Source: Mytilus californianus (taxonomy: Eukaryota). Taken from it: a stretch of DNA of 64,000 bases. This document shows, piece by piece, positions 13,852 to 48,985 of the stretch. How positions within the stretch are numbered: position 1 is the stretch's first letter; the number at the start of each line of letters is the position of its first letter. The position numbers were made by a program, and so were the translations under genes. Location of the stretch: positions 71,052,001-71,116,000 of the forward strand of contig NW_026262581.1 in the NCBI RefSeq assembly GCF_021869535.1. The letters run 5' to 3'. The notes below the pieces were generated by a model, which had not been told where the DNA came from, ran no database searches, and worked only from the letters and a program-made list of their open reading frames with translations.

Positions 13852-14304
13852 AGGTTACAAGGAAGTAATTATTTACATAGGCGACAATGGTAGCCTTTTT
13901 TGGTCCTGTGTTTTCCATATCAAAGATCCATTGACAAAAATGTCGAAATCTGAATTATCAACACCTTTGTGTGCAATTGAAACTGCAAAACACATATGGT
14001 GCTGCAGCTTTTTTGATAGAAAAATGGCATTTTTTAGGGTACTCAACGGTTCCGGGATTTTCGAAATAGTATAAATGAAGAACACCCGTTGCTAAATTTG
14101 GCACAGAAAATGTTTCTCGTCACAGAGAGTTTTCTCTAAATTTCTCGCTATTTCTACACCAATGGCCAACACTCATTTCTCACTATTTCAATTTTGATTT
14201 CTAATTACTAGGGCAGCAGAAAATAAATTTACTTCTACCTATTATCTTGGATGTGAAATTTAGGTGGCGCCAATCATCTTTATTTACTTCCTTTTAACCT
14301 ATAC
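13852..14304. mobile_element. 453-bp MITE-like module, copy 2 (direct repeat of copy 1)
   Basis: Same TIRs, TA-flanked. About a dozen substitutions relative to copy 1, counted by eye. Confidence 0.7.
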
Positions 14305-23879: not shown

Positions 23880-25800
23880 ATTTTTTTTGTAATTATTTTA
23901 TTTTTCATGATGAAACATGTGAAATTACATACTACAGTATTTGATACACATTATAAAAAATTAAGTAATACTTGAAAGATCATAAAGATATAATAAGATA
24001 TAAATATAAATATCACAATTGATTTTGTTAATTAATTAAATAAAAGCTGCTTCTAACAAATGCCATTTCTGATCCATGTTTTCTTTTTGTACAGGGGTTA
24101 AGAAACATACCGAGTATTTTTCTATATTAATCCAATATTTTAAATATTCTATCCCACCATATTTTGTGGGGGATATGTTCTTACATCTACATTTTTTATA
24201 TGTAATATTTGAATAACAACAAAATATTATTAACTGTTTTACGGTTGACAAAATCCTCAGACACACCTAAAATGACTTCTTGTGCACTGAAAGGCAGAAT
24301 AATGCCACAATTTTTGATCCAATCTATAACGGATAGCCAGAAGTTTTGTGTTACATTACATTCCCAAAAAATGTGAAAAATATTTTCTTTAATTTCTGAA
24401 CAAAATGTACATAGTTCAGTTTCTTTTAATTTACATTTCAATAAAAATGAATTACATGGTAGAATCCTATGAACAATCTTAAATTGAAAGTTTTGTAAAA
24501 AAGAATTTCTGGTTATAATGAAGGGCATGGAATAAATAGCAGTCCAATCTCCAATCTGCATATTTAAATCTATTTCCCATTTATTACGGGAAGTTAAAGA
24601 TACCACTTTATTATCCTCCAAAAATAATTTATAGAAAAATTTACAAGATTTTGGTTCCTTTTTAACTTTATCTATTATATATTAATTTATTTTCAATAAT
24701 ATCCAGTTTTGATCTACCTTCTATTATACTTTTCCATCTATTTGGAATCGCACTTAAAATACCATAAAACTCTACAAAATTAGTATTGATATCATACTTT
24801 TTTTTAAATTCATCATATGAGAATAATGTATTATTATCTGACATCAGATCATTAATAAAGAATATACAATTTTCAATATATTTGCACCTCAAAATCATCT
24901 TGCCATCCATTTTGATGTTTGGGTTCAGCCATATGGACTGGGCCAGAATTTCAGTATTGTTTTCAGCTTTAAGCTTATTTCTTAACTTGAGAAAATTTAC
25001 CAGGATATCATGCCAAAAGGGATTGACTTTTTCAGCTAAATAAAGTAATCCTTCTTGACTTAAGTGTAAAATTTTTTCACCCCCCCCCCCTATTTATTTC
25101 TATTCCGTTATATTTGGAATTTCCCTATTCTATTTCTATCTTTAGACTTGTGGTACAAGTTTGGCTAGTATGTAAATCAGAAGTGGTCTGATGTTACTGT
25201 TGTTTTCTGCACGAATATTTCGAGGGCGGTAGTACGGGTGGGGTTTTATAGGCATATATAAGTCCTGATTACGTTTGATTATTATCGATGTGCTCCAGTA
25301 ACTTTGATAGACGAAGTTAACGTTAAGCTCTGCATAATATATTACAGTTATGTTTGTATTGATATGTATTTAGGGGACATTGTGAATGTATATAGATGGA
25401 ATTGTGGTATATTTTTGTAATTTGTAAAATGTTTACAAGATATTAAATGTTGTTTCGCTGAGAAAATAAGAAAGTTACTGCGAGCAAACAAACCTAAATT
25501 ATGACTTGTCTCTTATTTAGCCATGTATTTAGTATAGAAATGTTTTAAATTCGGACGAATTCATGAGGGAGAATTTAAAAAGTTTTAATAACTACAACCC
25601 TTCCAATATATGTTAGTTCTCTATAATCCCAAGTTTTGAGCAATGACTTGATACTGTTTATCTTGGCTGTAAAATTACATAGAGTCTTATCCACTTTAGC
25701 AAGCTCAAACCATATACCTAATAGTTTAAACCTCCCAGAGTGGTTCCAAACAAATTTTTTTTCTGGTAAAAGTTGACTCATTTTAGTACTTACCCAAACA
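23880..25800 (-). mobile_element. L1/Tx1-type LINE, 3' part of ORF2 (post-RT plus zf-RVT), interrupted at about 25080-25570
   Basis: ORF 25575..25781 has FKLLGIWF...TWDYRELTYIGRVVVIK. ORF 24196..24621 has FQFKIVHRILPCN...CTFCSEIKENIFHIFWEC (zf-RVT). A-rich 3' tail near 23880-23905. Confidence 0.85.
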
Positions 25801-28311: not shown

Positions 28312-29767
28312 TTCGTTCTCGAAAATAACATCATCAGCATATAAAAATATAGCTTTTTTTTCTTCATCTATGTTATTACTAAAATTTAACGCATTAATAT
28401 CATCACCCAAATTATTTATATAATATATTAAAAATTATAGATGATAAAACACAACCTTGTTTCAACCCAGAATCAACGTTAAACTATTCAGTCATATTAC
28501 CATTTACACGTACACTACATTCTACATTAGAGTATAAAGCTTTTAGAGAGTACATAAACTTTGAACTTATACCTAAATTTTCTAGTTTGTTAAACAAAAA
28601 AAATATATTAATTGAGTCATAAGCCTTCTTAAAGTCTGTATAAAAGCTACATATGTTTATAATTTACACTTTTTCCTGGTTTCTATTATTGGTGTTATAG
28701 TGCTTATAATGATCAATTGTACTTTTGCCTTTCATAAAGCCATTTTGCTCATCGTTAATTATCTCCCTTTCATCTAATCATTTGACTTATCTGTCATTTA
28801 AAATACTACAATACATCTTGTATGCAAATGGAGCTAGAGTTATGCCCCTATAAGATAAAGGATCTCTAGGATCTGATGTAGAACATTTTGGTATTCGGGT
28901 TATAATTCCCTTATTCCACAAATTTGATACTTTACCAGAACTGAAACATAAGTTAAATAATTTACGTAAAATAGAAATAAAAGAAATATTCTTGCATATT
29001 TCAGCTTGAATAAGGGTAATACCTGCACTTTTACAATTTTTTACATTCATTACAATTTTATGAACCTCATCAATGGTAATTTCCTTATCTAAATCAATAC
29101 AAATAATGTTTTCTTTAATATTACAATGTTCAACCTTATTACACTCTGCATTTACATTTGGGTTCAATAAATTGTGGAAATTGTTTTTCCATTTACTTAA
29201 AATATTTTCTAAATTGTTAGTTATAGTTCCATCATCTTAAGTAACTTCATTCGGAATACACATCTGTCTCTCGTTACCTATACCAATTTGACCAATTCTA
29301 CGTAAAATCTGTTTTGGGTCATTGTCACTAAAATTAACTAGCTCTTGTCAGCGGTACCAATATTGACGCTTATATTTTTGTGTAAGTCTGTCAAATTCTT
29401 TGCGTTTATCAACAAAGTGTTTACGTAATTGTTGTTTTAAGGTTCCCTGTTTAAAAGTTACATAGTCATTTTCTGCTGTGCAAACATTGTTCCACTTCTT
29501 TGTTAGATTGTCATTCCACCATGGTTTTTTAATTCGTCTTTTTCGATTGTTTGTACTGTTCAGAACTTTGACTTTAGATTCTTATTTATTGTTCATTTCA
29601 GAGTGTAAAATTTCAACAAAACTATCATAATTATAATTTATCAACTTTAAATTATCTCTCTTTAAAAAATAGAACTCTGTATATTATTTACACACATATT
29701 AATTTAATTCAATATATCGTTATTTGTCATCCAATCATTTGGGATATTTTTCACATCATATGAAACA

Positions 29768-30475
29768 TATGTATTCTTTTGTTGGCTCATGTTATTGTGA
29801 GCACTATGTATTCTTTTGTTGGCTCATGTTATTGTGAGCACTATGTATTCTTTTGTTGGCTCATGTTATTGTGAGCACTATGTATTCTTTTGTTGGCTCA
29901 TGTTATTGTGAGCACTATGTATTCTTTTGTTGGCTCATGTTATTGTGAGCACTATGTATTCTTTTGTTGGCTCATGTTATTGTGAGCACTATGTATTCTT
30001 TTGTTGGCTCATGTTATTGTGAGCACTATGTATTCTTTTGTTGGCTCATGTTATTGTGAGCACTATGTATTCTTTTGTTGGCTCATGTTATTGTGAGCAC
30101 TATGTATTCTTTTGTTGGCTCATGTTATTGTGAGCACTATGTATTCTTTTGTTGGCTCATGTTATTGTGAGCACTATGTATTCTTTTGTTGGCTCATGTT
30201 ATTGTGAGCACTATGTATTCTTTTGTTGGCTCATGTTATTGTGAGCACTATGTATTCTTTTGTTGGCTCATGTTATTGTGAGCACTATGTATTCTTTAGT
30301 TGGCTCATGTTATTGTGAGCACTATGTATTCTTTTGTTGGCTCATGTTATTGTGAGCACTATGTATTCTTTTGTTGGCTCATGTTATTGTGAGCACTATG
30401 TATTCTTTTGTTGGCTCATGTTATTGTGAGCACTATGTATTCTTTTGTTGGCTCATGTTATTGTGAGCACTATGT
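29768..30475. repeat. 37-bp minisatellite, 19 near-identical copies, inside LINE ORF2
   Basis: Unit TATGTATTCTTTTGTTGGCTCATGTTATTGTGAGCAC. 29768-30470 is 703 bp = 19 x 37. One substitution seen near 30298. Confidence 0.97.
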
Positions 30476-31557
30476 GATAAACTAATAGAACTAATTTCAT
30501 TTATCATATCAAAATTGGTTTCAAATTCCCAACATAATACAGAATGATCAGGTATATGATTTCGACCAAACGAACCTGGCCGAGCACTTTTATTACATAA
30601 AACACTTACTCTTATAACTTTGAAATTTTTATAATGACACAAACTTTCATATGGAACAACACAGTAATGTGTTCGAATGGGTTAACAACTAATTGTCTGA
30701 AATATGAAGTTACCATTGTTATGTTCATTGAAAGCATCTTTTCATAAAAGAGCTGATTTATTTTTCTGAAAACTTTGTCACTGGTTTCCACTTTTTAAAG
30801 GCTCTCCTTGCAATAGAAAAACGTTCTTTTATTCGCAATTGATTATGGATAAGGTTGTTTTAAGTGCCTAATTTTTTAGTAGAAACATATGTGAGATTAT
30901 CATAGGTAGGATATCGCCCATTTAAAACACAGTTGATAGAAATTCACGAAATACTTCACCATAGTTGTTGGCTGTAAAATCGGTAATATTGCACTCACTT
31001 AGTTGGTCTATTCCCTGAATGAAATCGTTATAATTACCTAATCGACTATTGAAGTCTCCACATAAATAGAAAAAAAATTCCTTTAAGTATTGAATAAATA
31101 TCAAATAAAGTAAACACGTATAAGACGTTTTTAAACTAGAGACAGAGAAACTGAAATGGGTCGAATTTGGCGCGCAATGTTGTGAGAGTTACATCATAAA
31201 CGGTGTGACGTCAACGTGGGTCATTTGCATAGCTAGGTCAGTAGTACCATTCATTGACAATGTGGCTGCAAAGTGATGTATTTACTAAAATGAGTGCAAA
31301 TAATCGATATAATAAGATAAAATCGTTAGTGGATTAAATATTCAATTACAGACATCATGAATAATCTACAGAATTCGATATTTCACAAGAAACAACCATG
31401 GAACAAAAGAAAACGCGCGTGATGTTCCCCGTTGTAATGGGTAGCAACGTCCGGGTATATGGGTTAGCAACACCCAGGGGCTATGGGTTTTGTAACGACA
31501 TGCGTTAACCAATCAAAATCCTAGAAATATACTTAGCCGGGGATAATAGCACTTTAA

Positions 31558-34285
31558 CCCTCTTGCTGCCAAAGAGACATTTATGGCTTCTACACACAAA
31601 ACTTGTTGATTGTGTAGAACGTCGAAGGTCCATGGTAACGTCACAATACAGAGGGCACTGACAAGCAAAGACGGAGCCAAAAGGAAGATTTTGGCGGGAA
31701 TGAAGTAAACTGATTTAAATGCATTATTTGTATACTTAAAACGGATGTCAACAAATGATACAGGATCATAAGCTTGTTAGTACTATAATACCAACTTATT
31801 TAAACGTGTTTACTAATTACGTAGTTCGTCATTTTCATGCAAAATATCGCATACTTTCGAGAAATTTGTTAAAAGTTTTTTCATATATCCTTTAATCAGA
31901 ATATCTTAATTAATAATCGCATTCCTAATAAATAATCACAGAAAAGGTAACTGTTATACTTGATTACGCGAAATATCAATATTCACAATACACGCTTTAT
32001 TCAGTTGTTATTTAAGAGAACTGGAAAATATTTGTTGGGCTCAAATGACGCGATTGACTTCTTAAATATTTGTTGTAAAGGTACACAAATGTAACACGAT
32101 ATACTTGTAGCGATATGATATTTCAATACATTTTATACCTGTTTCATCATGGAAGAAATAATCTAAAAATATTTATTTTCATTCGAAATGGGGATGTTAA
32201 ATTAGTAGGTGACCTAACGATTTCTCTTCCTATCAAACATGTCATCCTTTCCCAGTGGCAATCTCAATATTTAGCCATTCATCTCAGATCTTTTACTTTG
32301 TGGGACCTACTGAGCAACAGATTTATTGTTCATTAGATCCCAGTCGTCCTTAATATTGCATGAAATACCTGCCACTGAACGTTGAACAAACAACAATTTA
32401 TCAATCAACGAATCATAAGAGATATTTCATGTATGCCAAAAAATATAATATTTTCAAGTCATGAATAATGACTGATTCAGGTTCAGGTTCACATGTAGAC
32501 AATAGAAATTATTTTTAGAATTTCTTCCCTCGTTTTCCTGTTTTTCAAATTCATATTTCAAACATTTCTCTAAAATTTTGAACAATAAGTGGTCAACAAA
32601 ATAATGATAAACATGATAAAGAAATAAACAATATGAATAAGGTTTATAAAAATTCTTTCCTCGCCTACCGAAACAAGGCTTGAAATGAAAAAAATTAATC
32701 TGACACATATCATACTTTACAGCACGAAGTAGTTCATAGAATCGGCTGTTCTGAGTTTTATTTATTTTTTATTTGTACTTGCATTTTTTTTAAATTTTTA
32801 TTGGGGGCCGTTGATTTGTTTATATAATTATTTGAAAGATTCTTTCCGGTATTTTTCAATTATAACAAGGTTTACTAAGCTAATTAGATAACAAGGATAA
32901 TATATTCTAGTATTTTAGAGGTGGTTAAGAATCAGTTATGCATTTCACTTGGCAAAGATAAAATAAACTGTTATCACAGAGATATGTCTCGCCTTTTTGT
33001 AATTTTGATAATGCAAATGTTGAAATTAAAATAGCAATACTTTAACATGTAAGTTATGCAAATATTCAAAGTCGATGAACCATGACTGAAGGTACATGGC
33101 TAAACAATCTCCATGGAATGAGATGTGCCAATGTTAATACAACTCTGCATACCAAATACCATTGACTTATTATAAGTCGTTCCCTTTAAACAAACCTAAA
33201 CACAAACATTAACTTGTAAACTATGTAAAAGTTTCAAAGTCAATGAACCATGATCAGGGATGGGGCTATATAATCTCCATGGAAACGATACTTGCAAATG
33301 CCAATAAATTTGCATACCAAATATCATTGACTTAACATGAGCAGTTCATCTTAAACTGATCTAATCACAAACTTATACTTGTAAACTAAGCAAAAGTTTC
33401 AAAGTAAATAGACCATGACTGAGGGGGCGGGGCCAAATATTCTCCATGGAAATGAGATGTGCTAATGCTTATACAACTGAACAGCAATTAACATTGGCCT
33501 GCCACTAATGGTTCCCCTTGAACTGACCTAATCACAAACTAATACATGTTAACTTAGCAAAATTTTCAAAGCCTATAGACCATGACTAAGGGGGCGGAGC
33601 CAAATAATCTCCATGGAAATGAGATATGCCAATGCTTATACAACTGCATACCAAATATCATTGACCTACCACTAGTGGTTCCCCATAAATTGACCTAATC
33701 ACAAACTAATACATGTAAACTATGAAAAGTTTCAAAGTCAATAGACCTTGACTGAGGGGGCAGGGCCAAATAATCTCCATGGTAATCAGATGTGCCAATG
33801 CTAATACAACTGCATACCAAATATCATTGACCTACCACAATTGTTCACCATGAACTAGACCTAATCACAAACTAATACATTGTTGACGCCGCCGTCGCCG
33901 CCGATGCCGGAAACAGCATACCTATGTCTCGATTTTTTGACTGCGTCAAGGCGAGACGACAAAAGCGCTTATAAAATTATTAGCAATATTGTCTTCATTT
34001 TTTAAAGATAAGAAATATAAAAAAAACTATATTTCAAGGTTAAAAGTTGTATTTTTAAATAATGTAATATTAAAAACATCGTTTATAACAATCTTAGTGC
34101 AAGGATTTTTATAAAATTACTTTTAATCGATTTTCCTAATTACGGCTAAATTGACGCGGGAAAAATTATGGACGGCGGGAAAGCACTGTTCTACAGAGAG
34201 GCACAAGTTTTGCAACGTCACAAATATGAAACGTCAAGATGCTTTTGGCGCGACAAAGCAAGAAATAAACTCGGCAGCAAGAGGG
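31558..34285. mobile_element. Non-autonomous piggyBac-like element (TTAA TSD)
   Basis: TTAA|CCCTCTTGCTGCC at 31554-31570 and GGCAGCAAGAGGG|TTAA at 34273-34289: a perfect 13-bp TIR. No transposase ORF. Confidence 0.8.
32965..33962. mobile_element. HINE/Helentron-like element with about five internal 165-170-bp tandem repeats, nested in the piggyBac-like element
   Basis: AAAGTCAAT(G/A)(A/G)ACCATGA-like motif recurs near 33066, 33238, 33401, 33567 and 33733. ATGTCTCG is present at both ends, with a terminal hairpin (TTGAC...GTCAAGGCGAGAC). The unit length matches the Cg170/BIV160-type bivalve satellites; identity to them was not verified. Confidence 0.7.
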
Positions 34286-35059: not shown

Positions 35060-35615
35060 ATGTTATTTTCGTAACGGGCGTTGTCCTGGATAGTTGGTTT
35101 ATTGGAAATATAAACAAAGGTGATAAAATGGACTCAAAAAATTATAGACCAATTAAAAATGTGAGTTGCCTTTGGAAACTCGTTACTGTAATTTTAAGTG
35201 AGCAATTAACTGAAATTTAGGACGACTTTCTTATTTTGAATTAATTTTAATGTGGATTTCGTAAGGGGTATTCAACACTGACTAAAAATGTGTTTATATA
35301 TTTTTTATTTTTTTTTTTGAAATTCTAAAAACCAAGAAGAGAAAAAATGTTTTGCGCATTTAGTGATTTTGAAAAGCTTTCGAAAAAGTTTGGCGGGATC
35401 GACTATGGTATAAGTGTCTATTGAATAATATGAATGGTAACATATATAATAAAATTGTAAAAATGTATAACGGTACAAATTTTTGCATTTCTTATAATGA
35501 TTGTAATCAACATTAATTTTCCCCTTGTAGCAACGGTGTATGTCAAGGGAAACTTTTGTCCCCTCTTCTTTTTGCCTTATTTGTGAACGGCCTTGAGTCA
35601 TATCTATAAAACTGC
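35060..35615 (+). mobile_element. Degenerate LINE RT fragment
   Basis: Manual translation gives KGDKMDSKNYRP, CGFRKGYST, CAFSDFEK and NGVCQGKLLSPLLFALFVNGLESYL. Confidence 0.75.
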
Positions 35616-35619
35616 AACA

Positions 35620-35990
35620 ACATTCACCAACTAGTACGCCGTGCCGCTGTCCTTTCACATGTACCTTCTGCTGAGGTCGAAGATGTGTGGTTTAATGCCC
35701 TAATCGACATGGAATCAGATTGATACTAACATCAACTACAAGTCCTTTACAGACTATGTAACAACATACTCGGTCGAACAGAACAGTCACCTTTGGGACC
35801 ATTACACAGTACAGGGACCGAGGACTACACATCTAGAGGGATGGCACACCAAGCTGAAGAAACATGTCCGGGACCCACATCCAAACATCATTAAACTCAT
35901 GTATAAATCTAATGAAACATGAGGAAGCTTTCAACGCCCTGACCATGATCAAAATGCAGCCGGTGGGAAGAGAGTGGCCCAAAAACTCTG
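35620..35990 (+). mobile_element. Mutator-like (MULE) transposase C-terminal fragment
   Basis: Manual translation with frameshifts gives LVRRAAVLSHVPSAEVEDVWFNAL...TDYVTTY...LWDHYTVQGPRTTHLEGWHTKLKKHVRDPHPNI, which contains the RT(N)NxxEGWH-type catalytic Glu motif. Confidence 0.75.
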
Positions 35991-37330
35991 GGAAGCATTT
36001 CGGAATGGGTCCGGGCCTGGTTCCTTAAATAATTTAAGATGAGGGGGGAATGTTTGGCATCACGATCCAAAAAATAGGTATGGCGCCCATCGAAAATATA
36101 CGGCTTTACGGGAGAGTCTTCCTTGATCATTGCAGATAATATGGACTCTGGACAGGACTGAAAAACTGTGGCTGAGGTCTCAAATCTGGTTCCACCAACA
36201 TTTATAAAAAAACGGGTTTGCTGGCTCTTTTGTATTTGTTCCAACTTTAATTTCTTTACTGGGGTAGGAGTGTAAATGGCAGCAGCCTTTCTCAATTCAG
36301 ATGGGGAGAGGAGTTCCTGAGTAGGCGAATAGGTTGGACAAGGCTGTGTAGCTAACGGGATACATAAACTAGTGGAGGTGAGGGGTGGTTCCAATGATGG
36401 TAGTTCCACAACAGAGACATCAATATTAGGGATGGCTGTATCAATATCGGGGACGGTTATAACAGGGATGTCTGTATATGGCATATCAGGATTGGGGCTG
36501 GTCTTGCAGGGATCACTTGGCAGAGGAGAAATAGGTTCCACTGCCGAAGTGAAACCCACAATATTATCCAAAAAAGCATCCTCCTCCGGATCACATAGTG
36601 AAACTTCCTCAAGACTTCCCACTGAGGAATTCTCCATCTCCTTCCATAAATTAGAAAGTACCTCTTTCTGCTTTTGCACCGACTCCTTCCTGTTCTCCTT
36701 TATCTTCTCATCCTCTTTCTTACTTGCCCTCTCCTCCTTCTTCTTCTCCTTTTCTTCTTTCTTCTTCTCCGTCTCATCCTCTTTTCCTTTCTTACTCTCC
36801 TTCTCCACTTCTTTTTCTTCCTTCCTTCTCTTTTTTTCTTCCCTCTTCTCCTTTCTCTCCCTTTCTTCCTCTGGTGTTCTCTTCTTCTCCTGCACCTTCT
36901 TAACTTCCTTCTTCTTTTTCTCCCCTCCATCCCCAAATACCATATTAATCTCCACATACAAGTTCCCAAGTTCTGTCCTCTACTTCTTTGTCCCTTGGTC
37001 CTGTTCCTTCCTGTGAGACCTCTTTTTGCTATCTTTCTGCAGCTCCTTTTTTTCTTCCTTGTCCACCCTCTCCGTTATCATCTTTTCCTCTCTCTGTCTT
37101 TGGAACAGAAGGAACTGATCCTCCTCCTCTTTTGTACAAGTCATTGTGGTCCTGTTTATTAACTTCAACATTCCCTCACACTTCTTGTGGGCAGCTCTAC
37201 GGCTTACCACCAACCTACACTCCTCACACCTCCAACCAAACCCACTATGTTGTTCCGTCATATGCCTTTTGCATATTATTGACTGGTCAAAAGTGAAATC
37301 ATGGCAAATTCCACAGGTATATACTGTGAC
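35990..37330 (-). pseudogene. Accessory ORF3: C2H2 + C2HC zinc fingers, K/E coiled coil, Pro/acidic linker, KCTD-type BTB (T1) domain
   Basis: ORFs 36980..37336 and 35909..36961 share a frame and are separated by one TAG (36980-36982). Motifs: CGIC-x13-H-x4-H, CEEC-x9-H-x2-C, and FINVGGTRFETS...YFLDRDAKHSPLILNYLRN. The BTB is cut after EMLPR by the MULE fragment. Confidence 0.8.
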
Positions 37331-37350
37331 CTGCAATTATAAAAAGGAAC
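37331..37350 (-). promoter_or_regulatory. Candidate splice acceptor in front of ORF3
   Basis: Minus strand TTCCTTTTTATAATTGCAG|GTC. An in-frame TAA lies immediately upstream (37337-37339), and the first in-frame ATG falls inside zinc finger 1. Confidence 0.6.
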
Positions 37351-37445
37351 ATTTCCTTTAAAATCTCGCTATTTGATTTTATATATTTCTATAAAATAAC
37401 CAAAAACTGTACTATACTGGATAGATATATGGAATTTTAGGGTTT

Positions 37446-37469: not shown

Positions 37470-39660
37470 CTATTTTAACCAACTTGAAACATTTTCCCCA
37501 AGATAGGGCTTCAACCTGTCTTGGTGCACTACTTTAGGTTTGGTCTTTGGACCTTTCTGTATACGATATATCACATCATTAAGTTTATTTACCACAATAT
37601 ATGGACCTTCCCAATTATTTTGTAATTTTGGACACAACCCCTTTACACGACGAGGATTGTGCAACCACACTGGATCTCCTGCATCAAATTTCTGCATTTT
37701 TGTTGAAATGTCATAATTTCTTTTCATCCTGTCGCTTGACAGTTTTAATTTATTTCGTGCAAATTGATGAATTACCTCTAACTTTTGAGATAATTCATAT
37801 GCATAAACAGTTTTTAAATGTAAAGGTGACTTTTCAGTCTCTGGTCCACCCAGAATTAAATCTACTGGTAAATTAACTTCTCTTCCAAATAACATGGAAC
37901 ATGGAGATGTACCCAAACTCTCATGTTCTGATGACCTATAGGCCAACATTAATAAATAAATATATTCGTCCCAATCTCTTTGGTGTTTGCTTACAAAGGC
38001 AGATAACATAGTTTCAATAGTTGAATTCGACTTTTCAACCATACCATCCGATTTTGGCCTGACTGGTGTTGTACGGGTTTTATGAATACCCAAAATATTA
38101 CACATCTCTTTAAACACATGAGACTCAAAATTAGACCCTTGGTCTGAGTTAATAGAAAGAGGAACCCCAAAAATGGTTACTTTTCTTTCTACAAATTTCT
38201 TAGCAACTGTAACTGCTTCAGTGTCTGGAATTGGTATGGCTTCCGTCCATTTGGAATAATAATCCTGAACTACCATTAGATAGCGATTATTATTCACACT
38301 ACATGGTAAAGGTCCTAGAATGTCAATGGCCATTCTTTCCCAAGGAGCACCCACAAGATACTGTTTCATTGGGGCCTTAGGTTTTTTACAAGGTGCTTTC
38401 TTAGCACAAATATCACATTTAGTACACCAAAATTTAACATCCTGTCTCATTTTATACCAAAAATATCTCTGTTTAATTTTTGACAGAGTTTTTCTTACAC
38501 CAAGATGACCACCGGTCACTGTGTTATGAACTTGGTTCAACACGAACCTTTTAAAATTAGCTGGAAGAACAATATGTAGATCATAATGTTTTCCATTATA
38601 GCTTTCCCATTTTCTATATAAAATTCCATTGACAAGAATTAAAGAATTTAATCTTGACCAATAAAATTTAACTCCAGGACTCATATGGGATACATCTGCC
38701 CATGTGGGTTTAACTTCATCTATTTTCCACTGAATAATTATACTGATTACATCATCAGATAACTGAGATTCTGAAACATTTTCAAAATTTATTTCTTTAA
38801 CTGGGTTGTCCTTCTCATTTTGACTACAACAATAATCCTTAGATCTGGTACAAACTCTCACTATTTTAGAATGAACAGGGAGTACATCAGGGTTTTTCTC
38901 TGGACCCTTACTATTAAATTTATTATGAATGACATGACTTTTTACTTTGTGGCACTTTTCGTCACTTGTCATATTTGGTCTCCTATCTTCATTTATACAG
39001 CTAATACTAGGTTTTGTAACTGACAACTCTGCACTGACATCTTGAACATTTCTGCAAGATTCACTAACAGTGACACTATCATTACAATTTTCAACTGTAA
39101 AACTGTCTTTATGAGTTGGAACCAATTCATAATTTATTTCTACTCTAGCACAGTGAGGACATTCTTTATTATAGCAAGGACGTCGACTTAGGGCGTTTGC
39201 ATTATTATGGGACCTTCCAGCTCTGTGCTCAATCTTAAAATCATAGGATGCCAGGACCTCGAACCAACGAGCTAACTGACCTTCTGGATTCTTAAAATTA
39301 AACAACCAACTTAATGCACCATGGTCACTTCTAACCTTGAAGTATTTACCATATAAATAATGGTGAAAATGTTTAATAGAGGCTACTACAGCTAGTAGCT
39401 CTCTTCTGGTAACACAATATTTTCTCTCTGATCTACTGAAAGTTTTACTAAAGTAACAAATTACTTTTTCTACTCCATCTTGGAGTTGGGATAGCACTGC
39501 TCCCATACCAACATTACTTGCGTCAGTGTCTAATATAAATAAATCCTCCCTTGTGGGGTAGGCTAAAATAGGTGCACTAATTAAGGTATTCTTTAATTCC
39601 TCAAAGGATTGTTGACAATCGTCTGTCCAGACAAATTTCTGGTTTTTCTCAGTAACCTTA
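37470..39660 (-). pseudogene. pol: Gypsy pol: RNase H and integrase
   Basis: LDTDASNVGMGAVLSQ, ELLAVV, DHGAL, NANALSRRPC. Integrase has the H-x6-H...C-x2-C zinc motif, the DILGP...SDQG...E core and the WEGPY (GPY/F) module. Confidence 0.95.
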
Positions 39661-39678
39661 TATAAAGGTTTAGCTTTA

Positions 39679-40554
39679 TCAGCATATATATTTTAAAATA
39701 AATTTTCTATAATAGGATGTTAATCCTAGAAAACTTCTTACATCTTTTATACTCTTGGGCACTGGCCAGTCCTTAACTGACTGAATTTTATTTGGGTCAG
39801 TAGCTACTCCACTTTCGCTAACAATGTGACCTAAAAATTTAACTTCTGTCTTTAAAAAGTTACACTTCTTGGGATTCAGCTTTAAATTAGCTGCTTTTAA
39901 TCTTTGAAAAACTTCTTTCAAGTTTTTCATATGCTCCTCAAATGATTTTGAGAAAATAATAATATCATCTAGATAAACTAGACAAATTTTCCAGGTCAAC
40001 CCTGATAAAACTGCTTCCCTTAATCTTTCAAAAACAGGGGCACTATTACATAGACCCATGGGCATTCTTTTGAACTGCCAGAGACCACCTCCTGGAAATG
40101 AAAAGGCTGTTTTTGGTCTATCTTCTTTGGCTACGGGAATCTGATAATATCCTGACTTCAAATCGACGGTTGAGAAGAACTTGGAGCATGACAATGAATC
40201 TATTGTGTCATCTATACGAGGTAACGGGTAGGATGGACGTAAAACCAGTAAATTTACGGAGCGAAAATCAATACAGAACCTCCAACTGTCATCTGACTTC
40301 TTTACGAGAACAATATTGGAGTTCCAGGGACTTGTAGAGGGTTCTATAATATCTTGCTGAACCATTTTCTGAATTTCAGCTTCAGCATCTTTCATTCTAG
40401 CTAGAGGTATTCGTCTGGGTCGCTGACGTACTGGAGGGTGATTTCCAGTATTTATGGTATGTTCAACTAAATCAGTTAAACCAATGTCCTCAGAGGACTT
40501 TGAGAATATATTACTATACTCCATTAAAAGGTCTTTAAATTTTTCATTTTGATC
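39679..40554 (-). pseudogene. pol: Gypsy pol: reverse transcriptase
   Basis: RFCIDFR, LPRID, DLKSGYYQI, MPMGLCNS, YLDD, FLGHIV. In-frame stop at 40555-40557 and a frameshift in the ATATAT run near 39685. Confidence 0.95.
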
Positions 40555-41400
40555 TTAATCAAGATTAATTTGACTAGACTCAAATACTTCATGTAAATAA
40601 TCAGGTAATTGTCTCCCCTTATTTATTGTAGCTTGGCCACCAGCCACATTATTAACAAACTCAGAAGTTTGAATATCTTCTTCATTTACTTTATTGCAGG
40701 TAGCAATAATTGTACCCTTATATAAAGTGCAGGGCTCATTATTTATATTTATTATTCTCAAAGGAATATTATACATCTCTGGATGTACAATTGATCTTGC
40801 CACCAATAAACCATTTTTTTCCATAAATTTCTCATTAGGTTTTATTAAACCAGCTAAACCTCTAAAAATAGGTTCATTGGACTCCCCAGAAACAATCATT
40901 TCTGAATTAGGAGGCACATTTACTGTCTCTTGTATAGCAACTCGATAACAAGATTTAGCACTACTTGCATAATGAAAACATTGAATTATCTCCCCTTTAA
41001 TTTTCAACTTATTTTGACTTAATAAGACATCACAGTCATGAGTCACAAGAAAATCCATCCCAATGATTCCTTCATTGGAAATATCAGCCACTAAAACATT
41101 GTGGTGATAAATATGATCTCCAAGGCAAATTTCAACATCAACATGTCCTATAAATGGTGCACTATCACCAGTAGCAGTAATTAAATTAATATTCACAGGA
41201 TTAATCTTAGGAAGTAATGAGGGATTGATTTCATTAATAAATTTCTTACTCAAAATAGTAACATTTGCTCCTGTATCAACAAGAAAAGCTAATTTTTTAT
41301 CATTAATTTTAGCTCTTACAAATAGTCCCTCATTATTTGCCAAAGATTCATTGATCTTTATCGATTTGGGCCATTCTGACTTGGCCTGGCTCCGACCCCT
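40555..41400 (-). pseudogene. pol: Gypsy pol: aspartic protease and linker
   Basis: FLVDTGANVTIL and GIIGMDFL motifs. Confidence 0.93.
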
Positions 41401-41428
41401 GAGTCTGACCTCAACTGCATGGTTTCCC
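41383..41428 (-). promoter_or_regulatory. -1 ribosomal frameshift signal remnant (GGGAAAC plus hairpin) at the gag/pol junction
   Basis: Slippery heptamer G GGA AAC (41428-41422), an 11-nt spacer, then GGTCAGACTC-AGGGGTCG-GAGCCAGGCC, an imperfect stem-loop. Confidence 0.6.
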
Positions 41429-42916
41429 TGTTGATAGTAATAAGGTTGATTCTGGCTATTTTGACCAAAATTATTATTTCTTTGATTAAAATTTCTGTTT
41501 CCTTGTCCCAAAATTCTTATTCTGGTTATTATATCCTCTCTGGCTATTTTGATAATTCCTCTGTTGATTACCTCCCCCTTGGCTATTCCTATTCTGGTTT
41601 TGGGACATACCCTTAATATCTCTAGTTAAAGATACCAGTTCCTTCTTAAAATCAGACAACTCGTGCCTTAATGATTTAAAATCCTCCCCCTTGTCATTGT
41701 TCAACTCTGTATTAATTGTATTATTCTCATTATGAACTGTATCTGCCTGTCTAACCATGCGCCCGTTTTGTCTCTCCGCTAACTTTAAGGTCTCTAATCT
41801 TACAGCTAGTGTTTCTGCTTCATGTATAGATTTAGGGTTAGATTCCCTAAGTCTTAGTCTCATATCAGCATCTGGTAAAGCATCAATGAAATGTTCTAGT
41901 GCTAATACACTAGTTATTGTGGATGGGGCACCTGGATAAGCTTGCCTAGTCAATTTCTTAATTGACTGAGCTAACTGTGGTAAACTTTCTTCTTTCCCTC
42001 TCATACGGGTCTGAAGTTTTGCTCTAAATAATTCTGATTTTTCAGCTGAACCATATCTAGTGTCCAAAAACTTTAACCAAACTATCATAATCTTTCCTAG
42101 ACTCTTTATCTAGTTCATTTAAGAGGGCTCTTGCTCCCCCTTTAAAACTACCAGCCAAATATAATGATTTGGTTGCATAATTCCAACCATTTATTTCAGC
42201 TAAAATTTCAAATTGAGCTAAATATTCATTTAAATCTTCATCTCCCTCATACAACTGTGGCTTCATTGTTACATTACTAGACTTGGGTGAATAGGTATGA
42301 GAATTGGTCAATCTTGGAACTAGAGGTCTATCCAGTACAGCATAGTTTTGATTAACATTACGCATTTTGTCTTTATTAAATAAATAAATATTATCTGTGT
42401 TTTGTTGTTGTTTTGTTGTATTTTGATTTGTCTTAATATTTGCCCCAGGAACTGCTTGCCCAACACCTGATATCACTTCAGATATGTTTTCAGTGTTTAC
42501 CATGTCATTCATGTGATTACTGTGATTTACTAAATCTTTATTTTGTTCCATCATTTTATAAATGGTAGAAATATTTTTCTTGTTTTCATGTACATCATCT
42601 TCAATTTGGCTTATACGACCTTTAATAGAAGAAATTTCATCTCCAAAATCTCTTTTTATCTGATTTACAGCACAGATAACTTCTTTTTGACAATTAGAGA
42701 AATCATGAGTTATCTCCCCCAATTGGTCATAGAATATAAACTTTTAAGGTTTTTTAATTCATTAACAAATAAATATTGTTCTTTGTCATGGCTTATTGTC
42801 TGCTCATGCTCAACACTATCAACCTTCTGTTCATCTAAAGGAATGGTTATTTCCCCATCATTTTCCTCTTGGAAAGAATGATTAATAGCTATAATTACTT
42901 CTCCAGAATCATCCAT
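41420..42916 (-). pseudogene. gag: Gypsy gag with three frameshifts
   Basis: Pieces 42710..42916, 42057..42722, 41486..42088 and the N/Q-rich tail ending QQGN. Capsid-like motifs KPQLYEGDEDLNEYLAQFEILAEINGW and EHFIDAL. Confidence 0.88.
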
Positions 42917-43060
42917 AATGTACTAAAATTTTAATATTTCTAATTCAATTTAGATTTTTATAAAAATTTAGTGAAACAGTTTAACATCAGTCAAATATAC
43001 TAAAGCTTTTTCAATATAATTTTTAATAATCATTTCAAAAACCAATTTCAAAGTTAAATA

Positions 43061-43080
43061 GAATCCCATTTCTGACACCA
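43061..43080 (-). other. Primer-binding site complementary to the tRNA-Leu (CAA/CAG) 3' end
   Basis: Minus strand TGGTGTCAGAAATGGGATTC. The plus strand GAATCCCATTTCTGACACCA differs by one base from the eukaryotic tRNA-Leu(CAA) end GAATCCCACTTCTGACACCA. It lies 1 nt from the LTR end ...CGTTACA. Confidence 0.85.
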
Positions 43081-43081
43081 G

Positions 43082-44790
43082 TGTAACGATTTCGCCCCTT
43101 AAACCGAGTGGTAGGTTAAATTGAATAAGGAGGCTCGATCGAACATAATTTGCATGGATCCTTTGAGTTGGTATAAGGTTGAAATAATAACTAAGTCAGG
43201 TATAACTTTCAGATGTACTTTATGTAGCATCTATATAATCAAATATTTACAATTGATCACAAACTATACATTTATATCTATATACAACATGCCGTAATCA
43301 TTTATAATTTATAGGTCAGGAAGGTTGACTTGAAATTCCAATAAGGTTGACTGTTTCCGTAGGTTGATTTGGAAGAAGGTTGAACTTTTCAACCTTCTTT
43401 TGCCGATGGTATAAAATATTTATAAGGGTTGATTTAATAAAATATTCATATATATATTATTTCTTTCTGCTAAAATGAAAGTAGATTTCCAGAAAACCTC
43501 TCTCCTATTATCATAACGATAGAAGTTTGACTAAGTGGAACGACGGTTGACGGGACTTTCCTATAGGTTGAAGGTTGACTTATGCAAAACAAACAACAGC
43601 CATGTGCAGAAGGTTTAGTTTTCTTAAAACATTTAAAACCAGACTTAAGGTTGACTGTGGCTCAGACATATTTATAATAAACCAGGTTGACTAAAATGGA
43701 AACGACTAAGCTAAATTTGTGACTGCTCTTGCAGACGATGAGAATAATTCTGAAGTTCTACTACTGGAAGTGTTTTACGACCTTGACTTGATATACATCC
43801 CTCGCACGGTCGGCTCGGTGCCCGAAGGCGTTTGGTGAGCGTTTAAATAATTTTGTGCCATCGGTCAGGAACAGGTGGAGGACGCCATTTTGGTAGGCCG
43901 CCATCTTGGTTTTGTGAGTTGTTTTCTTTTGTTGACTATTTTGATGTTATGTCTTCACAACGGCTGCTTTCAGGGCCAGATTGGTCAGCTTGGCAGCCTG
44001 CTAACCTCGATGATGGAGTACTGGTAGATGAGTCTCGGACGTAGTATTAACGATGACAGGAAGCATTATCAGGACCAAAGTCGTGAGACAGTGAAATGGT
44101 GGTCCATCATCTAACACCTAGGATACAGCCCTCGGACGTCACTCGGCATACCACTCCCCCATCCATAATGGGTTTTGGAGTGTATGTTGACGCGGGAATT
44201 TGCCCTACGCGGATTATAGCCTAACGTAGTCTGTACAGCGTTGGATTGGTTTCTGTCATCGAAAGAAGTCGTTGATCCATCTAACAGTAAACCCTCATCG
44301 AAGATAGCGGGTAAAGGAGAGCTGACTCAGCACGTCCGTTCAGTTGTAATGACTGAGACGTGACTGGAATGAATGAGATGGATTGATCTGAAGTTCGTTT
44401 CATCAACCTTCTATTTATAATTTTTGGGTCAGTAGATCAACCAATCAAAACGTTTGTTATGTAAACAAGCTATCTCGTGTAATAAACCGCCAATACACAA
44501 CTAATATGGCTGCTCGAGTAAATAGATTATGGCACTGTTGGAATTTAGATGATTACGGCTAAAACACAAGTTATTCTATTAAGAAAATAAGTCACATTCC
44601 CACATCATCTATCATAAACGTACCTGCCAAACAACCGTAAATATTCTGTACGAGGTGAAATTCCATCGTAAAAACAGCGATGTAAAAGCGTAAACTAAAC
44701 AGCTGATTCGTAAAATTACTACTATAAATTACGGACAACACGAGATCCATTAATTTAATCATACGATTACTAAATCGTAATTATATTGAT
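43082..44790 (-). mobile_element. 5' LTR (proximal end exact, distal end undefined)
   Basis: Ends ...CGTTACA next to the PBS. On the minus strand ATTGG (near 44441) is followed by TATAAATAG (near 44412-44420). Two YY1-type motifs at 43883-43908. Confidence 0.7.
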
Positions 44791-44799
44791 AAGTATTAT

Positions 44800-44930
44800 T
44801 ATGGTCATAGAAGATTGGCACATCCAACGTCCTGAGCGTGGATTTATTCTGATGAACATTTAAAAGTAATATTATGGTCATAGAAGATTGGCACATCCAA
44901 CGTCCTGAGCGTGGATTTATTCTGATGAAC
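44800..44930. repeat. 73-bp satellite, two units
   Basis: ATGGTCATAGAAGATTGGCACATCCAACGTCCTGAGCGTGGATTTATTCTGATG occurs twice. Confidence 0.9.
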
Positions 44931-47127: not shown

Positions 47128-48374
47128 TTATTGTCCTGTGAATTTTTATCCGTGACTTAATTCAGGCAAATTTTATACCTTTCTTGCACTGTTGAAAATA
47201 AGGACAGAGGGACATCAGATATAAATACTGTTAGTATTAAATCGCACTGATAGCAGTTAGAAAATTTTAGATGGGTGAAAATAAGTTGAAATATGAAAGA
47301 AAACTTTCAAATAAGAATTACTCCTAAGCACACATAAAAAGGGAGACCCACTATAAAAGCGCTTGCGACCTAGCTCGCTTCATGATGATGTCTTTAGTTA
47401 TTACAATTGATAAATCTTCACTTATCAATCAGAGAGAGAGCTCTACTTATCAATATCAATAAAAATATATTTTAACTGTTGAATGACTTATTCTTCAATT
47501 ATTTAGTCTTAGAATTTATATCTTTAATTTTCACCAATTGTCTAAATTTGATTTATTGAACCTTTTTGTCTGCTTACGCCTTACTTACTAAAGATGGTTG
47601 AGATATGTTTAGCCGTTTTTACATAAAACATTTAAAAAATGAAAAACATCTAGCTTGTAAGTTATTTCTTCAAAGACATATATAGCATCATTTTAAAGCA
47701 AACTTATTTGTCCAAGGCATAAATGAATGATTGTACTGAAATGAATGAATGCATATAGCCTATTGTTAGAAAGCAGGACAAACTTATGTTTGCTGATGTT
47801 AAAATGTTTATAAAAAATACAGCTGATATTATGCCATATAATTATTTCATTGCTAATGGTGATTAAATTGCAACAAGCTACGGTTCGGTACCAATTTCGT
47901 CGTCAGCTCTGTTGCATAAGGACAAATGAAAATATTAAATTTCTTGGTAACAAGGATGTCATATAACCTCCTAGATGGTATTTTTTAAGATATATGAACA
48001 TCAAAACTCATGAGATACGTTTTATGACTGTTTGTTAAAAAGTGTCATTCAAGATCAATTAACAAAAATTATGGATTTTTTCCCTAATTTTTCAAAATAA
48101 TTTCCCCTTCTTACATTGATTTATAATCTCGACGAGGTTTTGATCTCAATATTATAGTCCTTTTAAAGACCACTAACTCAAGTATCGTAATTTATAACTC
48201 CCGTGAAGACGCTAATTAATTTTTATCAGAGACATGTCTCTGTTGTATTTAACAAGATTAGTATATTCAACGACATCTATTGGAAGGAGTTAAGAGTTAT
48301 CGTTAATTATCTACTGTCCAATATAAACAGATTGGGTTATCTCGCTTGGAAATGTGACATATTCTTGCACATGA

Positions 48375-48985
48375 TTTAAAAGTAATATTATGGTCATAGA
48401 AGATTGGCACATCCAACGTCCTGAGCGTGGATTTATTCTCATGTACATTGAGAAGTAGTATTATGGTCATAGAAGATTGGCACATCCAACGTCCTGGGCG
48501 TGGATTTATTCTGATGTCCACTAAAAAGTCATTTAATGGTCATAGAAGATTGGCACATCCAACGTCCTGAGCGCGGATTTATTCTGATCTACTAGTACAT
48601 TGAAAAGTAATAATATGGTCATAAAAGATTGGCACATCCAACGTCCTTGGCGTGGATTTATTCTGATGTCCAGTAAAAAGTCATATAATGGTCATAGAAG
48701 ATTGTCACATCTAACGTCCTGAGCGTGGATTTATTCTGATGTCCAGTAAAAAGTCATATAATGGTCATAGAAGATTGGCACATCGAACGTCCTGAGCGTG
48801 GATTTATTCTGATGTACATTGAAAAGTAGTATTATGGTCATAGATGATTGGCACATCCAACGTCCTGAGCGTGGATTTATTCTGATGTTCATTGAAAAGT
48901 AGTATTATGGTCATAGAAGATTGGCACATCCAACGTCCTGATCGCGGATTTATTCTGTTGTCCAGTAAAAATTCATATAATGGTC
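48375..48985. repeat. 73-bp satellite, about eight units, with two alternating linker variants
   Basis: ATGGTC starts at 48390, 48463, 48536, 48615, 48688, 48761, 48834, 48907 and 48980. Confidence 0.95.

What the first reader, a model, noticed from the sequence alone, without database searches (positions are those of the whole stretch)
35990..37350. Gypsy retrotransposon carrying a spliced zinc-finger + KCTD-BTB accessory gene
Seen: 140 bp after the integrase stop, on the same strand, a frame of about 447 codons begins at a polypyrimidine-CAG acceptor. It has a single TAG in an AAG-rich run and encodes C2H2 and C2HC fingers, a long K/E tract, a Pro/acidic linker, TPTPVKKLKL (NLS-like) and a T1/KCTD BTB domain. 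It is visibly more GC-rich than gag-pol. Established: KCTD BTB domains oligomerise and many bind Cullin-3; third ORFs at this position in Gypsy elements are usually env, expressed from spliced RNA; TE-encoded anti-silencing factors exist (Arabidopsis VANDAL VANC). Inference: a captured, non-env, nuclear DNA-binding and oligomerising or CUL3-adaptor protein that regulates or protects the element. I know of no description of such cargo in Gypsy elements.
Basis: partly seen in the sequence, partly recalled or inferred. Interest (0 to 1): 0.9.

Follow-up and report, generated by a model that had tools for sequence, protein, structure and literature searches.

The report
Mussel Gypsy element with zinc-finger/BTB gene
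A family of Gypsy retrotransposons in mussels, oysters and scallops carries, in place of an envelope gene, a conserved third gene for a two-zinc-finger, KCTD-type BTB protein; the copy in this window is a dead, 3'-truncated member of that family.

Summary
On the minus strand a Ty3/Gypsy gag-pol ends at 37470. After 139 nt, a frame of about 447 codons (37330-35987) encodes two C2H2-type fingers, a K/E-rich tract, an acidic/proline linker and a Pfam BTB_2 (T1/KCTD) domain.

This is not a chance neighbour or a host exon. In 12 related loci ORF3 follows the integrase on the same strand. These come from Mytilus coruscus, M. edulis, M. galloprovincialis, Pinctada imbricata and metagenome or sequencing-run contigs. 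Wherever both LTRs are held, ORF3 lies inside the LTR pair.

ORF3 is under purifying selection. Raw pN/pS is 0.07-0.3 in the fingers and BTB, against about 0.26 for pol. A pyrimidine-tract + AG acceptor-like motif sits 0-8 nt before its first codon in all ten loci inspected. GC3 is higher than in gag-pol in every lineage measured.

The window copy itself is defective. gag, pol and ORF3 are all interrupted, the element ends inside the BTB domain at 35987, and there is no 3' LTR.

Splicing, nuclear location, CUL3 binding and any pro-element function remain inference. I found no published description of this cargo. I rate it a new variant of a known kind (LTR elements with non-env accessory ORFs).

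The parts
43082..44780 (-). 5' LTR of the element. Relatives have LTRs of about 1.1 kb; this copy holds an extra block of about 0.63 kb that their LTRs lack.
   Evidence: blastn to both LTRs of L003, L004, L002 and L001. The LTR end followed by a TGG... primer-binding-like site aligns across copies.
42917..43081 (-). Leader between the LTR end and the gag ATG, including the putative primer-binding site.
   Evidence: Alignment A3; gag ATG located at 42916.
41486..42916 (-). gag, interrupted by frame changes (between one and three).
   Evidence: tblastn with the open gag of L009: 97% coverage, 57% identity, counts only. Weak SCAN (capsid-like) Pfam hit.
37470..41511 (-). pol (protease, reverse transcriptase, RNase H, integrase), interrupted by one frame change and one in-frame stop.
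   Evidence: Pfam gag-asp_proteas, RVT_1, RT_RNaseH, Integrase_H2C2, rve and Integrase_p58_C. tblastn with the L009 pol: 99% coverage, 74% identity, counts only.
37331..37358 (-). Conserved block ending in a pyrimidine tract + CAG, directly before the first ORF3 codon. Candidate 3' splice site.
   Evidence: Alignable in all 7 sequences of alignment A2, although the rest of the spacer is not alignable in L006 and L007. The same Y-tract + YAG sits 0-8 nt before the first codon in L009, L010 and L012.
35987..37330 (-). ORF3 as one part. It holds a two-finger zinc-binding head (about 37175-37330), a K/E-rich tract, an acidic/proline linker, and a BTB_2 match (36002-36205). It has one in-frame stop, and its 3' end is cut off by the end of the element.
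35560..35986 (.). Flank of unknown origin directly after the truncation point. It is GC-richer than the surrounding DNA and has no similarity to any relative's ORF3 tail, 3' region or LTR.
   Evidence: no homology; GC; no domain, no long ORF.

Best explanation
ORF3 is a conserved accessory gene of a clade of Ty3/Gypsy LTR retrotransposons of bivalves. It sits between the integrase and the 3' LTR, where errantiviruses carry env. It encodes a soluble protein with two N-terminal classical-type zinc fingers, a charged disordered middle and a C-terminal T1/KCTD-type BTB oligomerisation domain.

Shown:
- It is linked to gag-pol and lies inside the LTRs.
- It is conserved under purifying selection.
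- It has this domain content.
- The copy in this window is dead: gag, pol and ORF3 are interrupted, the 3' end is lost inside the BTB domain, and there is no 3' LTR.

Inferred, about 0.6: the protein is made from a spliced subgenomic RNA that uses the conserved acceptor-like site just before its first codon. In lineages whose frame has no ATG at its head, the start codon would come from an upstream exon.

Inferred, about 0.4, my preferred mechanism: it acts in the nucleus as an oligomeric nucleic-acid-binding regulator. The fingers bind DNA or RNA and the BTB domain multimerises the protein. It then acts on the element's own LTR, chromatin or transcripts, as a retroviral regulatory protein would, rather than as a structural or entry protein.
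For: Linkage:
- ORF3 homologues lie directly downstream of RT/RNase H/integrase on the same strand in L002-L005, L001, L006-L008, L009-L011 and L012 from Pinctada imbricata.
- LTR pairs enclose ORF3 in L001, L003, L004, L010 and L012.
- L009 is a circularly permuted unit of about 8.7 kb in which gag, pol and ORF3 are all called as open genes.

Selection:
- Window finger region against L001: 19 nonsynonymous changes on 281 sites and 60 synonymous on 60 sites.
- L006 against L007 BTB: dN/dS about 0.05.
- L009 against L011: ORF3 pN/pS 0.38, pol 0.26.
- L009 against L007: fingers 0.22, middle 0.59.
- Integrase is 82% identical between the window and L006, while ORF3 is 42-44% identical and stays open.

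Domains:
- BTB_2 at E 1.6e-17 over profile positions 2-89 of 94 in intact members.
- The closest solved structures are the BTB domains of KCTD9, KCTD7, SHKBP1, KCTD16 and KCTD5.
- Zinc ligands are invariant. The finger profile best matches CTCF and ADR1 fingers, at E 0.004-0.013.
- No hydrophobic segment reaches transmembrane level.

Splicing:
- A Y-tract + YAG lies 0-8 nt before the first codon in all ten loci inspected. These loci represent seven lineages.

Composition:
- GC3 is 0.40-0.55 in ORF3 against 0.25-0.36 in gag-pol in each lineage where both were measured.

Chromatin lead:
- Among the representatives I looked up, the named cellular relatives of this BTB are KCTD19-like multi-BTB proteins.
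- Mouse KCTD19 works with the zinc-finger protein ZFP541 and HDAC1 in a chromatin complex (PMC8104389, PMC8169937).
Against: - I saw no RNA or protein evidence.
- No conserved splice donor was found in the gag head.
- Pfam zinc-finger models stay below threshold, and the PDB finger match is marginal.
- The AlphaFold model is weak overall (mean pLDDT 58; BTB 71-82), and its fold matches to KCTD BTBs have poor rmsd.
- None of the six Mytilus copies examined has ORF3 open from the first finger to the end of the BTB domain.
- Nothing here separates a nucleic-acid regulator from a CUL3 adaptor.
- NG86 synonymous distances are saturated in most pairs, so the ratios are rough upper bounds.
Confidence: 0.7

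Rival explanations
1. CUL3 substrate adaptor. The BTB domain recruits host Cullin-3, and the finger/disordered part brings in a host factor such as a silencing or restriction protein for ubiquitylation. This would resemble the way retroviral accessory proteins and poxvirus BTB-Kelch proteins use cullin ligases. It shares the identity part of the best explanation and differs only in mechanism.
For: The best sequence matches among solved structures include known CUL3 partners: KCTD9, KCTD7 (solved with Cullin-3, 8i79), SHKBP1, KCTD5, KCTD10 and KCTD13. That many KCTD BTBs bind CUL3 is established knowledge. The BTB domain is the most strongly conserved part of ORF3.
Against: Similarity to any one KCTD is low (at most 32 bits). 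KCTD1, KCTD15 and KCTD16 match about as well, and to my knowledge they do not bind CUL3. No CUL3-contact residues were tested. The tandem fingers and acidic patch look more like a nucleic-acid-binding regulator.
Confidence: 0.3
2. Genomic-RNA handling factor, like Rev or the CERV protein of the nematode element Cer1. In this reading ORF3 is an oligomerising, RNA-binding nuclear protein made from the spliced RNA. It lets the unspliced, intron-containing genomic RNA leave the nucleus.
For: An element with a conserved internal acceptor needs a way to export unspliced RNA. Cer1 solves this with a protein encoded by a spliced mRNA (PMC10309623). Zinc fingers of this type can bind RNA, and oligomerisation is typical of such factors. 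gag-pol is AT-rich with low GC3, while ORF3 is not.
Against: No sequence or fold similarity to CERV or Rev appeared in any search. No export signal or RNA target was identified. The idea is purely analogical.
Confidence: 0.12
3. Passenger with no function for the element: a host KCTD-like gene transduced once and carried along neutrally.
For: ORF3 has a different base composition from gag-pol. The Mytilus copies examined are all broken somewhere in ORF3.
Against: ORF3 is retained, in position and open, in lineages whose ORF3 proteins are only 27-45% identical, in Mytilida, Pinctada, Crassostrea and Pecten. Nonsynonymous change is strongly suppressed in the fingers and BTB. The noncoding acceptor-like motif is conserved. 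Broken copies are equally broken in gag-pol.
Confidence: 0.03
4. Chance adjacency: an exon of a host zinc-finger/KCTD gene that merely lies next to a truncated Gypsy copy in this window.
For: The window copy has no 3' LTR, so ORF3 cannot be shown to lie inside the element from this window alone.
Against: The same adjacency, spacing and strand occur in 12 other loci from several species. Homology between copies runs uninterrupted from pol through the spacer into ORF3. ORF3 lies inside LTR pairs elsewhere.
Confidence: 0.01

Closest known systems
Errantiviruses and other env-bearing Ty3/Gypsy elements (Drosophila gypsy, ZAM)
   Same: A third ORF lies between the integrase and the 3' LTR. An acceptor-like site directly upstream fits expression from a subgenomic spliced RNA.
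   Different: ORF3 here has no transmembrane or signal-like hydrophobic segment and no env-type domain. It encodes zinc fingers plus a BTB domain, so it is not an entry protein.
Non-env ORF3s of bdelloid rotifer LTR retrotransposons (GDSL esterase, DEDDy exonuclease; PMC5408684)
   Same: These are animal LTR elements that acquired and kept a non-envelope third ORF of cellular type in the env position.
   Different: The rotifer ORF3s are enzymes. This one is a non-enzymatic finger + oligomerisation protein, in a different host phylum.
CERV of the C. elegans Gypsy-type element Cer1 (PMC10309623)
   Same: An accessory nuclear protein of a Gypsy-type element, encoded by a spliced element mRNA and serving the element's own RNA.
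   Different: No sequence or fold similarity was found. CERV has no BTB domain or fingers as far as the abstract read here shows. The function of ORF3 is untested.
KCTD family / T1-type BTB proteins (Pfam PF02214), including KCTD9, KCTD7, KCTD5 and KCTD19-like proteins
   Same: The C-terminal domain matches BTB_2 over nearly its whole length in intact members. It best matches KCTD BTB structures.
   Different: In KCTDs the BTB domain is N-terminal, whereas here it is C-terminal and preceded by zinc fingers. The gene is carried by a retrotransposon. Identity to any named KCTD is low. Oligomer state and CUL3 binding are unknown.
Giant-virus and poxvirus BTB proteins
   Same: These are BTB proteins encoded by mobile or viral genomes. 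The only viral fold matches were Pandoravirus and Mimivirus BTB proteins.
   Different: They belong to large DNA viruses, with other architectures (BTB-Kelch and others). No retroelement protein was among the matches.
ZFP541-KCTD19-HDAC germline chromatin complex of mouse (PMC8104389, PMC8169937)
   Same: A zinc-finger DNA-binding part works together with a KCTD19-type BTB part. KCTD19-like proteins are among the closest named cellular relatives of the ORF3 BTB.
   Different: There the two parts are separate host proteins, whereas here they form one element-encoded polypeptide. The likeness rests on two sea-star RefSeq names and is a lead, not a test.

Membership tests
Ty3/Gypsy LTR retrotransposon | pol domain order: protease, RT, RNase H, integrase | tested here: met
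   Pfam hits in that order on the minus strand.
Ty3/Gypsy LTR retrotransposon | Two flanking LTRs | tested here: not met
   In the window only the 5' LTR is present (43082-44780), and the element ends at 35987. The feature is met in relatives L001, L003, L004, L010 and L012.
Ty3/Gypsy LTR retrotransposon | Primer-binding site next to the 5' LTR | tested here: inconclusive
   A conserved TGG... stretch follows the LTR end. It was not matched to a tRNA, and there are no tRNA genes in the window.
Env-bearing Gypsy (errantivirus-like) | ORF3 is a membrane glycoprotein (signal peptide, transmembrane anchor) | tested here: not met
   The maximum Kyte-Doolittle mean over 19 residues is 0.3-1.5 in nine family members. 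There are no env domains.
Env-bearing Gypsy (errantivirus-like) | ORF3 expressed from a spliced subgenomic RNA | tested here: inconclusive
   The acceptor-like motif is conserved in all ten loci inspected. No donor was identified, and no RNA data were available.
T1/KCTD-type BTB (Pfam PF02214) | Match to BTB_2 above the gathering score | tested here: met
   Window 44.9 bits; P0013 64.1 bits; cut-off 21.4.
T1/KCTD-type BTB (Pfam PF02214) | Complete domain | tested here: not met
   The window copy covers profile positions 3-68 of 94 only. The domain is complete in P0011, P0013, P0041 and P0166.
T1/KCTD-type BTB (Pfam PF02214) | Homo-oligomerisation (tetramer or pentamer) | not testable with these tools
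   Only a monomer model could be made.
KCTD CUL3 adaptors | Binding to the Cullin-3 N-terminal domain | not testable with these tools
   No complex prediction was available. The best PDB matches include both binders and non-binders.
Classical C2H2 zinc fingers | C-x2-C ... H-x3-5-H ligand pattern and profile match | tested here: inconclusive
   The ligands are invariant in 7 lineages. The profile against PDB gives CTCF fingers at E 0.004. Pfam models stay below cut-off.
BTB-ZF (ZBTB) transcription factors | N-terminal PF00651-type BTB followed by C-terminal finger arrays | tested here: not met
   The order is reversed, and the BTB is of the PF02214 type.

The most novel reading that the evidence does not exclude
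A whole clade of mollusc Gypsy elements encodes its own cullin-ligase adaptor or chromatin regulator: a finger + T1-BTB protein made from a subgenomic RNA. It would disable or redirect a host silencing factor. That would make it the first retrotransposon counterpart of the retroviral accessory proteins that use host ubiquitin ligases.
Probability: 0.2. Interest if true: 0.85.

Novelty: new variant of a known kind. Interest (0 to 1): 0.62.

Why it matters
LTR retrotransposons with extra genes are known, but the extra genes of animal elements are mostly env or, in rotifers, enzymes. Here an old, widely distributed clade of bivalve Gypsy elements has kept a regulatory-type protein with zinc fingers and a KCTD-type BTB domain. 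The protein is under selection, it has its own composition, and a conserved acceptor-like site precedes it.

If it acts on host ligases, chromatin or the element's RNA, it would be an accessory protein in the retroviral sense, found in an invertebrate retrotransposon.

There is also a practical point. Copies of this gene are annotated in public mollusc genomes as host genes: 'DNA ligase 1-like', 'KCNC4', 'trichohyalin-like', 'putative potassium channel regulatory protein'. This inflates KCTD/BTB gene counts.

Tried and rejected
- LTR pair in the window: none found at two sensitivities. This is explained by the 3' truncation.
- Other copies in the window: none.
- tRNA genes for a primer-binding-site match: none.
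- Pfam on the finger piece: nothing at threshold.
- Protein search restricted to the finger region: only family members came back, so no independent host protein with these fingers was found.
- Phase-0 splice donor in the first 40 gag codons: candidates exist in single lineages, but none is conserved across L009, L010 and L012. I name no donor.
- AlphaFold and Foldseek: the BTB fold was recovered only weakly, so I use it as minor support.
- NG86 dS is saturated in most pairs, so I report raw counts and pN/pS instead.
- Counting ORF3 interruptions by tblastn is unreliable, because the K/E tract matches in several frames. I use that result only qualitatively.
- Sequence after the truncation point: no domain and no long ORF.
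- Literature: six searches and two full-text look-ups found no Gypsy element with BTB or KCTD cargo.
- The consensus lines printed by the alignment tools were not used for anything.
Full report
**1. Observation**

The finding lies on the minus strand. Pfam places protease, RVT_1, RT_RNaseH, Integrase_H2C2, rve and Integrase_p58_C in that order between about 41511 and 37470. The integrase frame stops at 37470-37472.

A pyrimidine tract followed by CAG ends at 37331, 139 nt further on. A new frame runs from 37330 to 35987 with a single in-frame stop. It encodes:
- two zinc-binding motifs;
- a K/E-rich tract;
- an acidic/proline-rich linker;
- a short conserved basic motif;
- a Pfam BTB_2 (PF02214) match at E 1.6e-11, covering profile positions 3-68 of 94.

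GC is 0.43-0.46 here against 0.32-0.36 in gag-pol. The window has no N runs and no second copy.

**2. Is ORF3 part of the element?**

The window alone cannot say, because no LTR pair is detectable. Relatives settle the question.

A protein search gave 16 homologues, mostly from four Mytilus species. Their loci were fetched:
- In L002, L003 and L004 (M. coruscus) and L005 (M. galloprovincialis), the homologue lies directly downstream of RT/RNase H/integrase genes on the same strand.
- In L001 (M. edulis), blastn shows one uninterrupted alignment of about 7.4 kb from the leader through gag-pol and the spacer into ORF3.
- LTRs of about 1.1 kb enclose ORF3 in L003, L004 and L001. In L001 a BEL/Pao element is nested between ORF3 and the 3' LTR.

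More distant lineages keep the same arrangement:
- L006 and L007 are metagenome contigs. Their integrase is 82-89% identical to the window's, and ORF3 is 42-58% identical.
- L008 is a contig assembled from a public sequencing run.
- L009 comes from a hydrothermal-vent metagenome. It is a circularly permuted unit of about 8.7 kb. gag (509 aa), pol (1282 aa) and ORF3 are all called as open genes.
- L010 has LTRs 99% identical. Its ORF3 protein, P0020, is only 27% identical to P0013.
- L011 also keeps the arrangement.
- L012 is from the pearl oyster Pinctada imbricata. Its LTRs are 95.7% identical and enclose gag, pol and ORF3.

Cluster look-ups add Crassostrea gigas and C. angulata, Pecten maximus, M. 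californianus and the gastropod Gigantopelta aegis as carriers of family proteins. A search of 1.84 billion representatives gave 217 clusters at E<=1e-10. The refutation condition 'not linked to Gypsy pol elsewhere' is therefore not met.

**3. State of the window copy**

Homology to every relative stops at 35986/35987, inside the BTB domain. The relatives' ORF3 tail, 3' region and 3' LTR have no counterpart anywhere in the window except the 5' LTR. The 5' LTR (43082-44780) carries an extra block of about 0.63 kb that relatives lack.

- gag has between one and three frame changes;
- pol has one frame change and one in-frame stop;
- ORF3 has one in-frame stop plus the 3' truncation.

The frame has no ATG at its head in this copy. 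The copy is dead. About 80 nt of open frame beyond 35987 are unrelated flank, which is why the BTB match stops early.

**4. Selection**

I compared the sequences as they stand, piece by piece, with no joining across interruptions.
- Window finger region against L001: 19 nonsynonymous differences on 281 sites and 60 synonymous on 60 sites.
- L006 against L007: NG86 dN/dS is about 0.05 in the BTB part and 0.18 overall. The integrase control (window against L006) gives about 0.09.
- Pairs with saturated synonymous sites give raw pN/pS as an upper bound. L009 against L011 gives ORF3 0.38 and pol 0.26. L009 against L007 gives fingers 0.22, BTB part 0.30 and middle 0.59.

ORF3 therefore does not evolve neutrally. 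The two ends are constrained about as much as pol, and the middle is relaxed. The second refutation condition is also not met.

**5. What the protein is**

- BTB domain. Intact members match BTB_2 over positions 2-89 of 94 at E about 1e-17. The closest solved structures by sequence are the BTB domains of KCTD9, KCTD7, SHKBP1, KCTD16 and KCTD5, all at modest scores. The fold search returns KCTD1, KCTD7, KCTD16, KCTD15, KCTD10 and KCTD13, but with poor superposition. The model has mean pLDDT 58, and 71-82 in the BTB part.
- Finger region. The cysteines and histidines of a C2H2 and a C2HC motif are invariant in seven lineages, as is the short linker between them. A profile of this region best matches tandem classical fingers of CTCF and ADR1, at E 0.004-0.013. 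Pfam finger models remain below threshold.
- Not an env protein. No segment reaches transmembrane hydrophobicity.
- Cellular relatives. Among the cellular proteins sampled, the named ones closest to this BTB are KCTD19-like multi-BTB proteins of sea stars.

**6. Expression**

The 28 nt before the first ORF3 codon end in a pyrimidine tract and CAG. They align across the window, L001-L004, L006 and L007, although the rest of the spacer is not alignable in L006 and L007. L009, L010 and L012 have the same kind of site 0-8 nt before the first codon.

Some lineages have an ATG at the head of the frame. Others do not, including the young L010 insertion. This fits a start codon supplied by an upstream exon. 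I found no donor conserved across lineages in the gag head and had no RNA data, so splicing remains an inference.

ORF3 has higher GC3 than gag-pol in each lineage where both were measured: 0.40-0.55 against 0.25-0.36. The difference is therefore maintained and is not a sign of recent capture.

**7. Mechanism**

Shown: a conserved, selected, soluble finger + BTB protein gene sits in the env position of a Gypsy clade.

Inferred: it is a nuclear, oligomeric, nucleic-acid-binding regulator that serves the element. I prefer this reading at about 0.4. The reasons are the tandem classical-type fingers, the charged and acidic middle, and a terminal oligomerisation domain, which together form the layout of a DNA- or RNA-binding regulator. 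A further lead is that KCTD19 works with a zinc-finger protein and HDAC1 on chromatin in mouse (PMC8104389, PMC8169937).

Rivals are a CUL3 adaptor (about 0.3) and a genomic-RNA export factor in the manner of Cer1 CERV (PMC10309623). My tools cannot separate these readings.

**8. Novelty**

Non-env third ORFs are known in rotifer LTR elements (PMC5408684), in plants (PMC7264820) and in Cer1. Six literature searches and two full-text look-ups, in the main mollusc LTR survey and the main bivalve transposon survey, found no BTB or KCTD cargo in a Gypsy element. The held library does not include Repbase, so an unpublished database entry cannot be excluded. I rate it a new variant of a known kind.

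I made one slip. My first notebook entry and several early tool calls use the bounds of the uninterrupted stretches of gag, pol and ORF3 as references. In my working I also compared the head of the ORF3 frame between copies. Together these imply places of interruptions.

No contig looked human. The window has no N stretches.

Noticed in passing
window 29768-30475: Tandem array of a 37-bp unit, about 19 copies at 99% identity, with decayed copies on both sides (29620-30622).
   Followed up: no
window 33045-33880: Satellite-like array of a 167-bp unit, 5 copies at about 79% matches, with a higher-order period of 333 bp.
   Followed up: no
window 44791-44930 and 48374-48985: Two arrays of the same 73-bp tandem repeat. 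The first lies directly outside the outer edge of the element's 5' LTR.
   Followed up: no
window 55430-55912 and 24199-24621 (minus strand): Fragments of other retroelements: an RVT_1 match (E 7e-14) and a zf-RVT match (E 4e-7). Neither is related to the Gypsy copy.
   Followed up: partly
L001 about 11650-18640: In the M. edulis copy a BEL/Pao element (Pao_retrotransp, DUF1759, DUF5641) is nested between ORF3 and the 3' LTR. That copy's gag and pol show no stops or frame changes against L009.
   Followed up: partly
L009 (hydrothermal-vent metagenome contig, 8852 bp): The first and last 127 nt are identical, so the contig is a circularly permuted full unit (ORF3 - LTR - gag - pol) with all three genes called as open. 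It probably comes from a young element of a vent mussel.
   Followed up: partly
L008 155-1320: In this contig, assembled from a public sequencing run, an integrase fragment is followed almost at once by the second finger of ORF3. The integrase C-terminus, the spacer and the first finger are missing. This is either an internal deletion or a processed RNA form.
   Followed up: no
public annotations of P0006, P0007, P0010, P0041, P0164/P0165: Copies of this element gene are named in public records as host genes: 'DNA ligase 1-like', 'KCNC4', 'cilia- and flagella-associated protein 251-like', 'trichohyalin-like', 'putative potassium channel regulatory protein'. Some gene models fuse it to the integrase (P0019, P0022, P0048, P0176).
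   Followed up: partly
window 42800-42916 and the gag heads of L001, L009, L010, L012: The first residues of gag form a short motif (M-D/E-D-S-x-E-V/I) that is conserved from Mytilus to more distant lineages. Its function is unknown.
   Followed up: no
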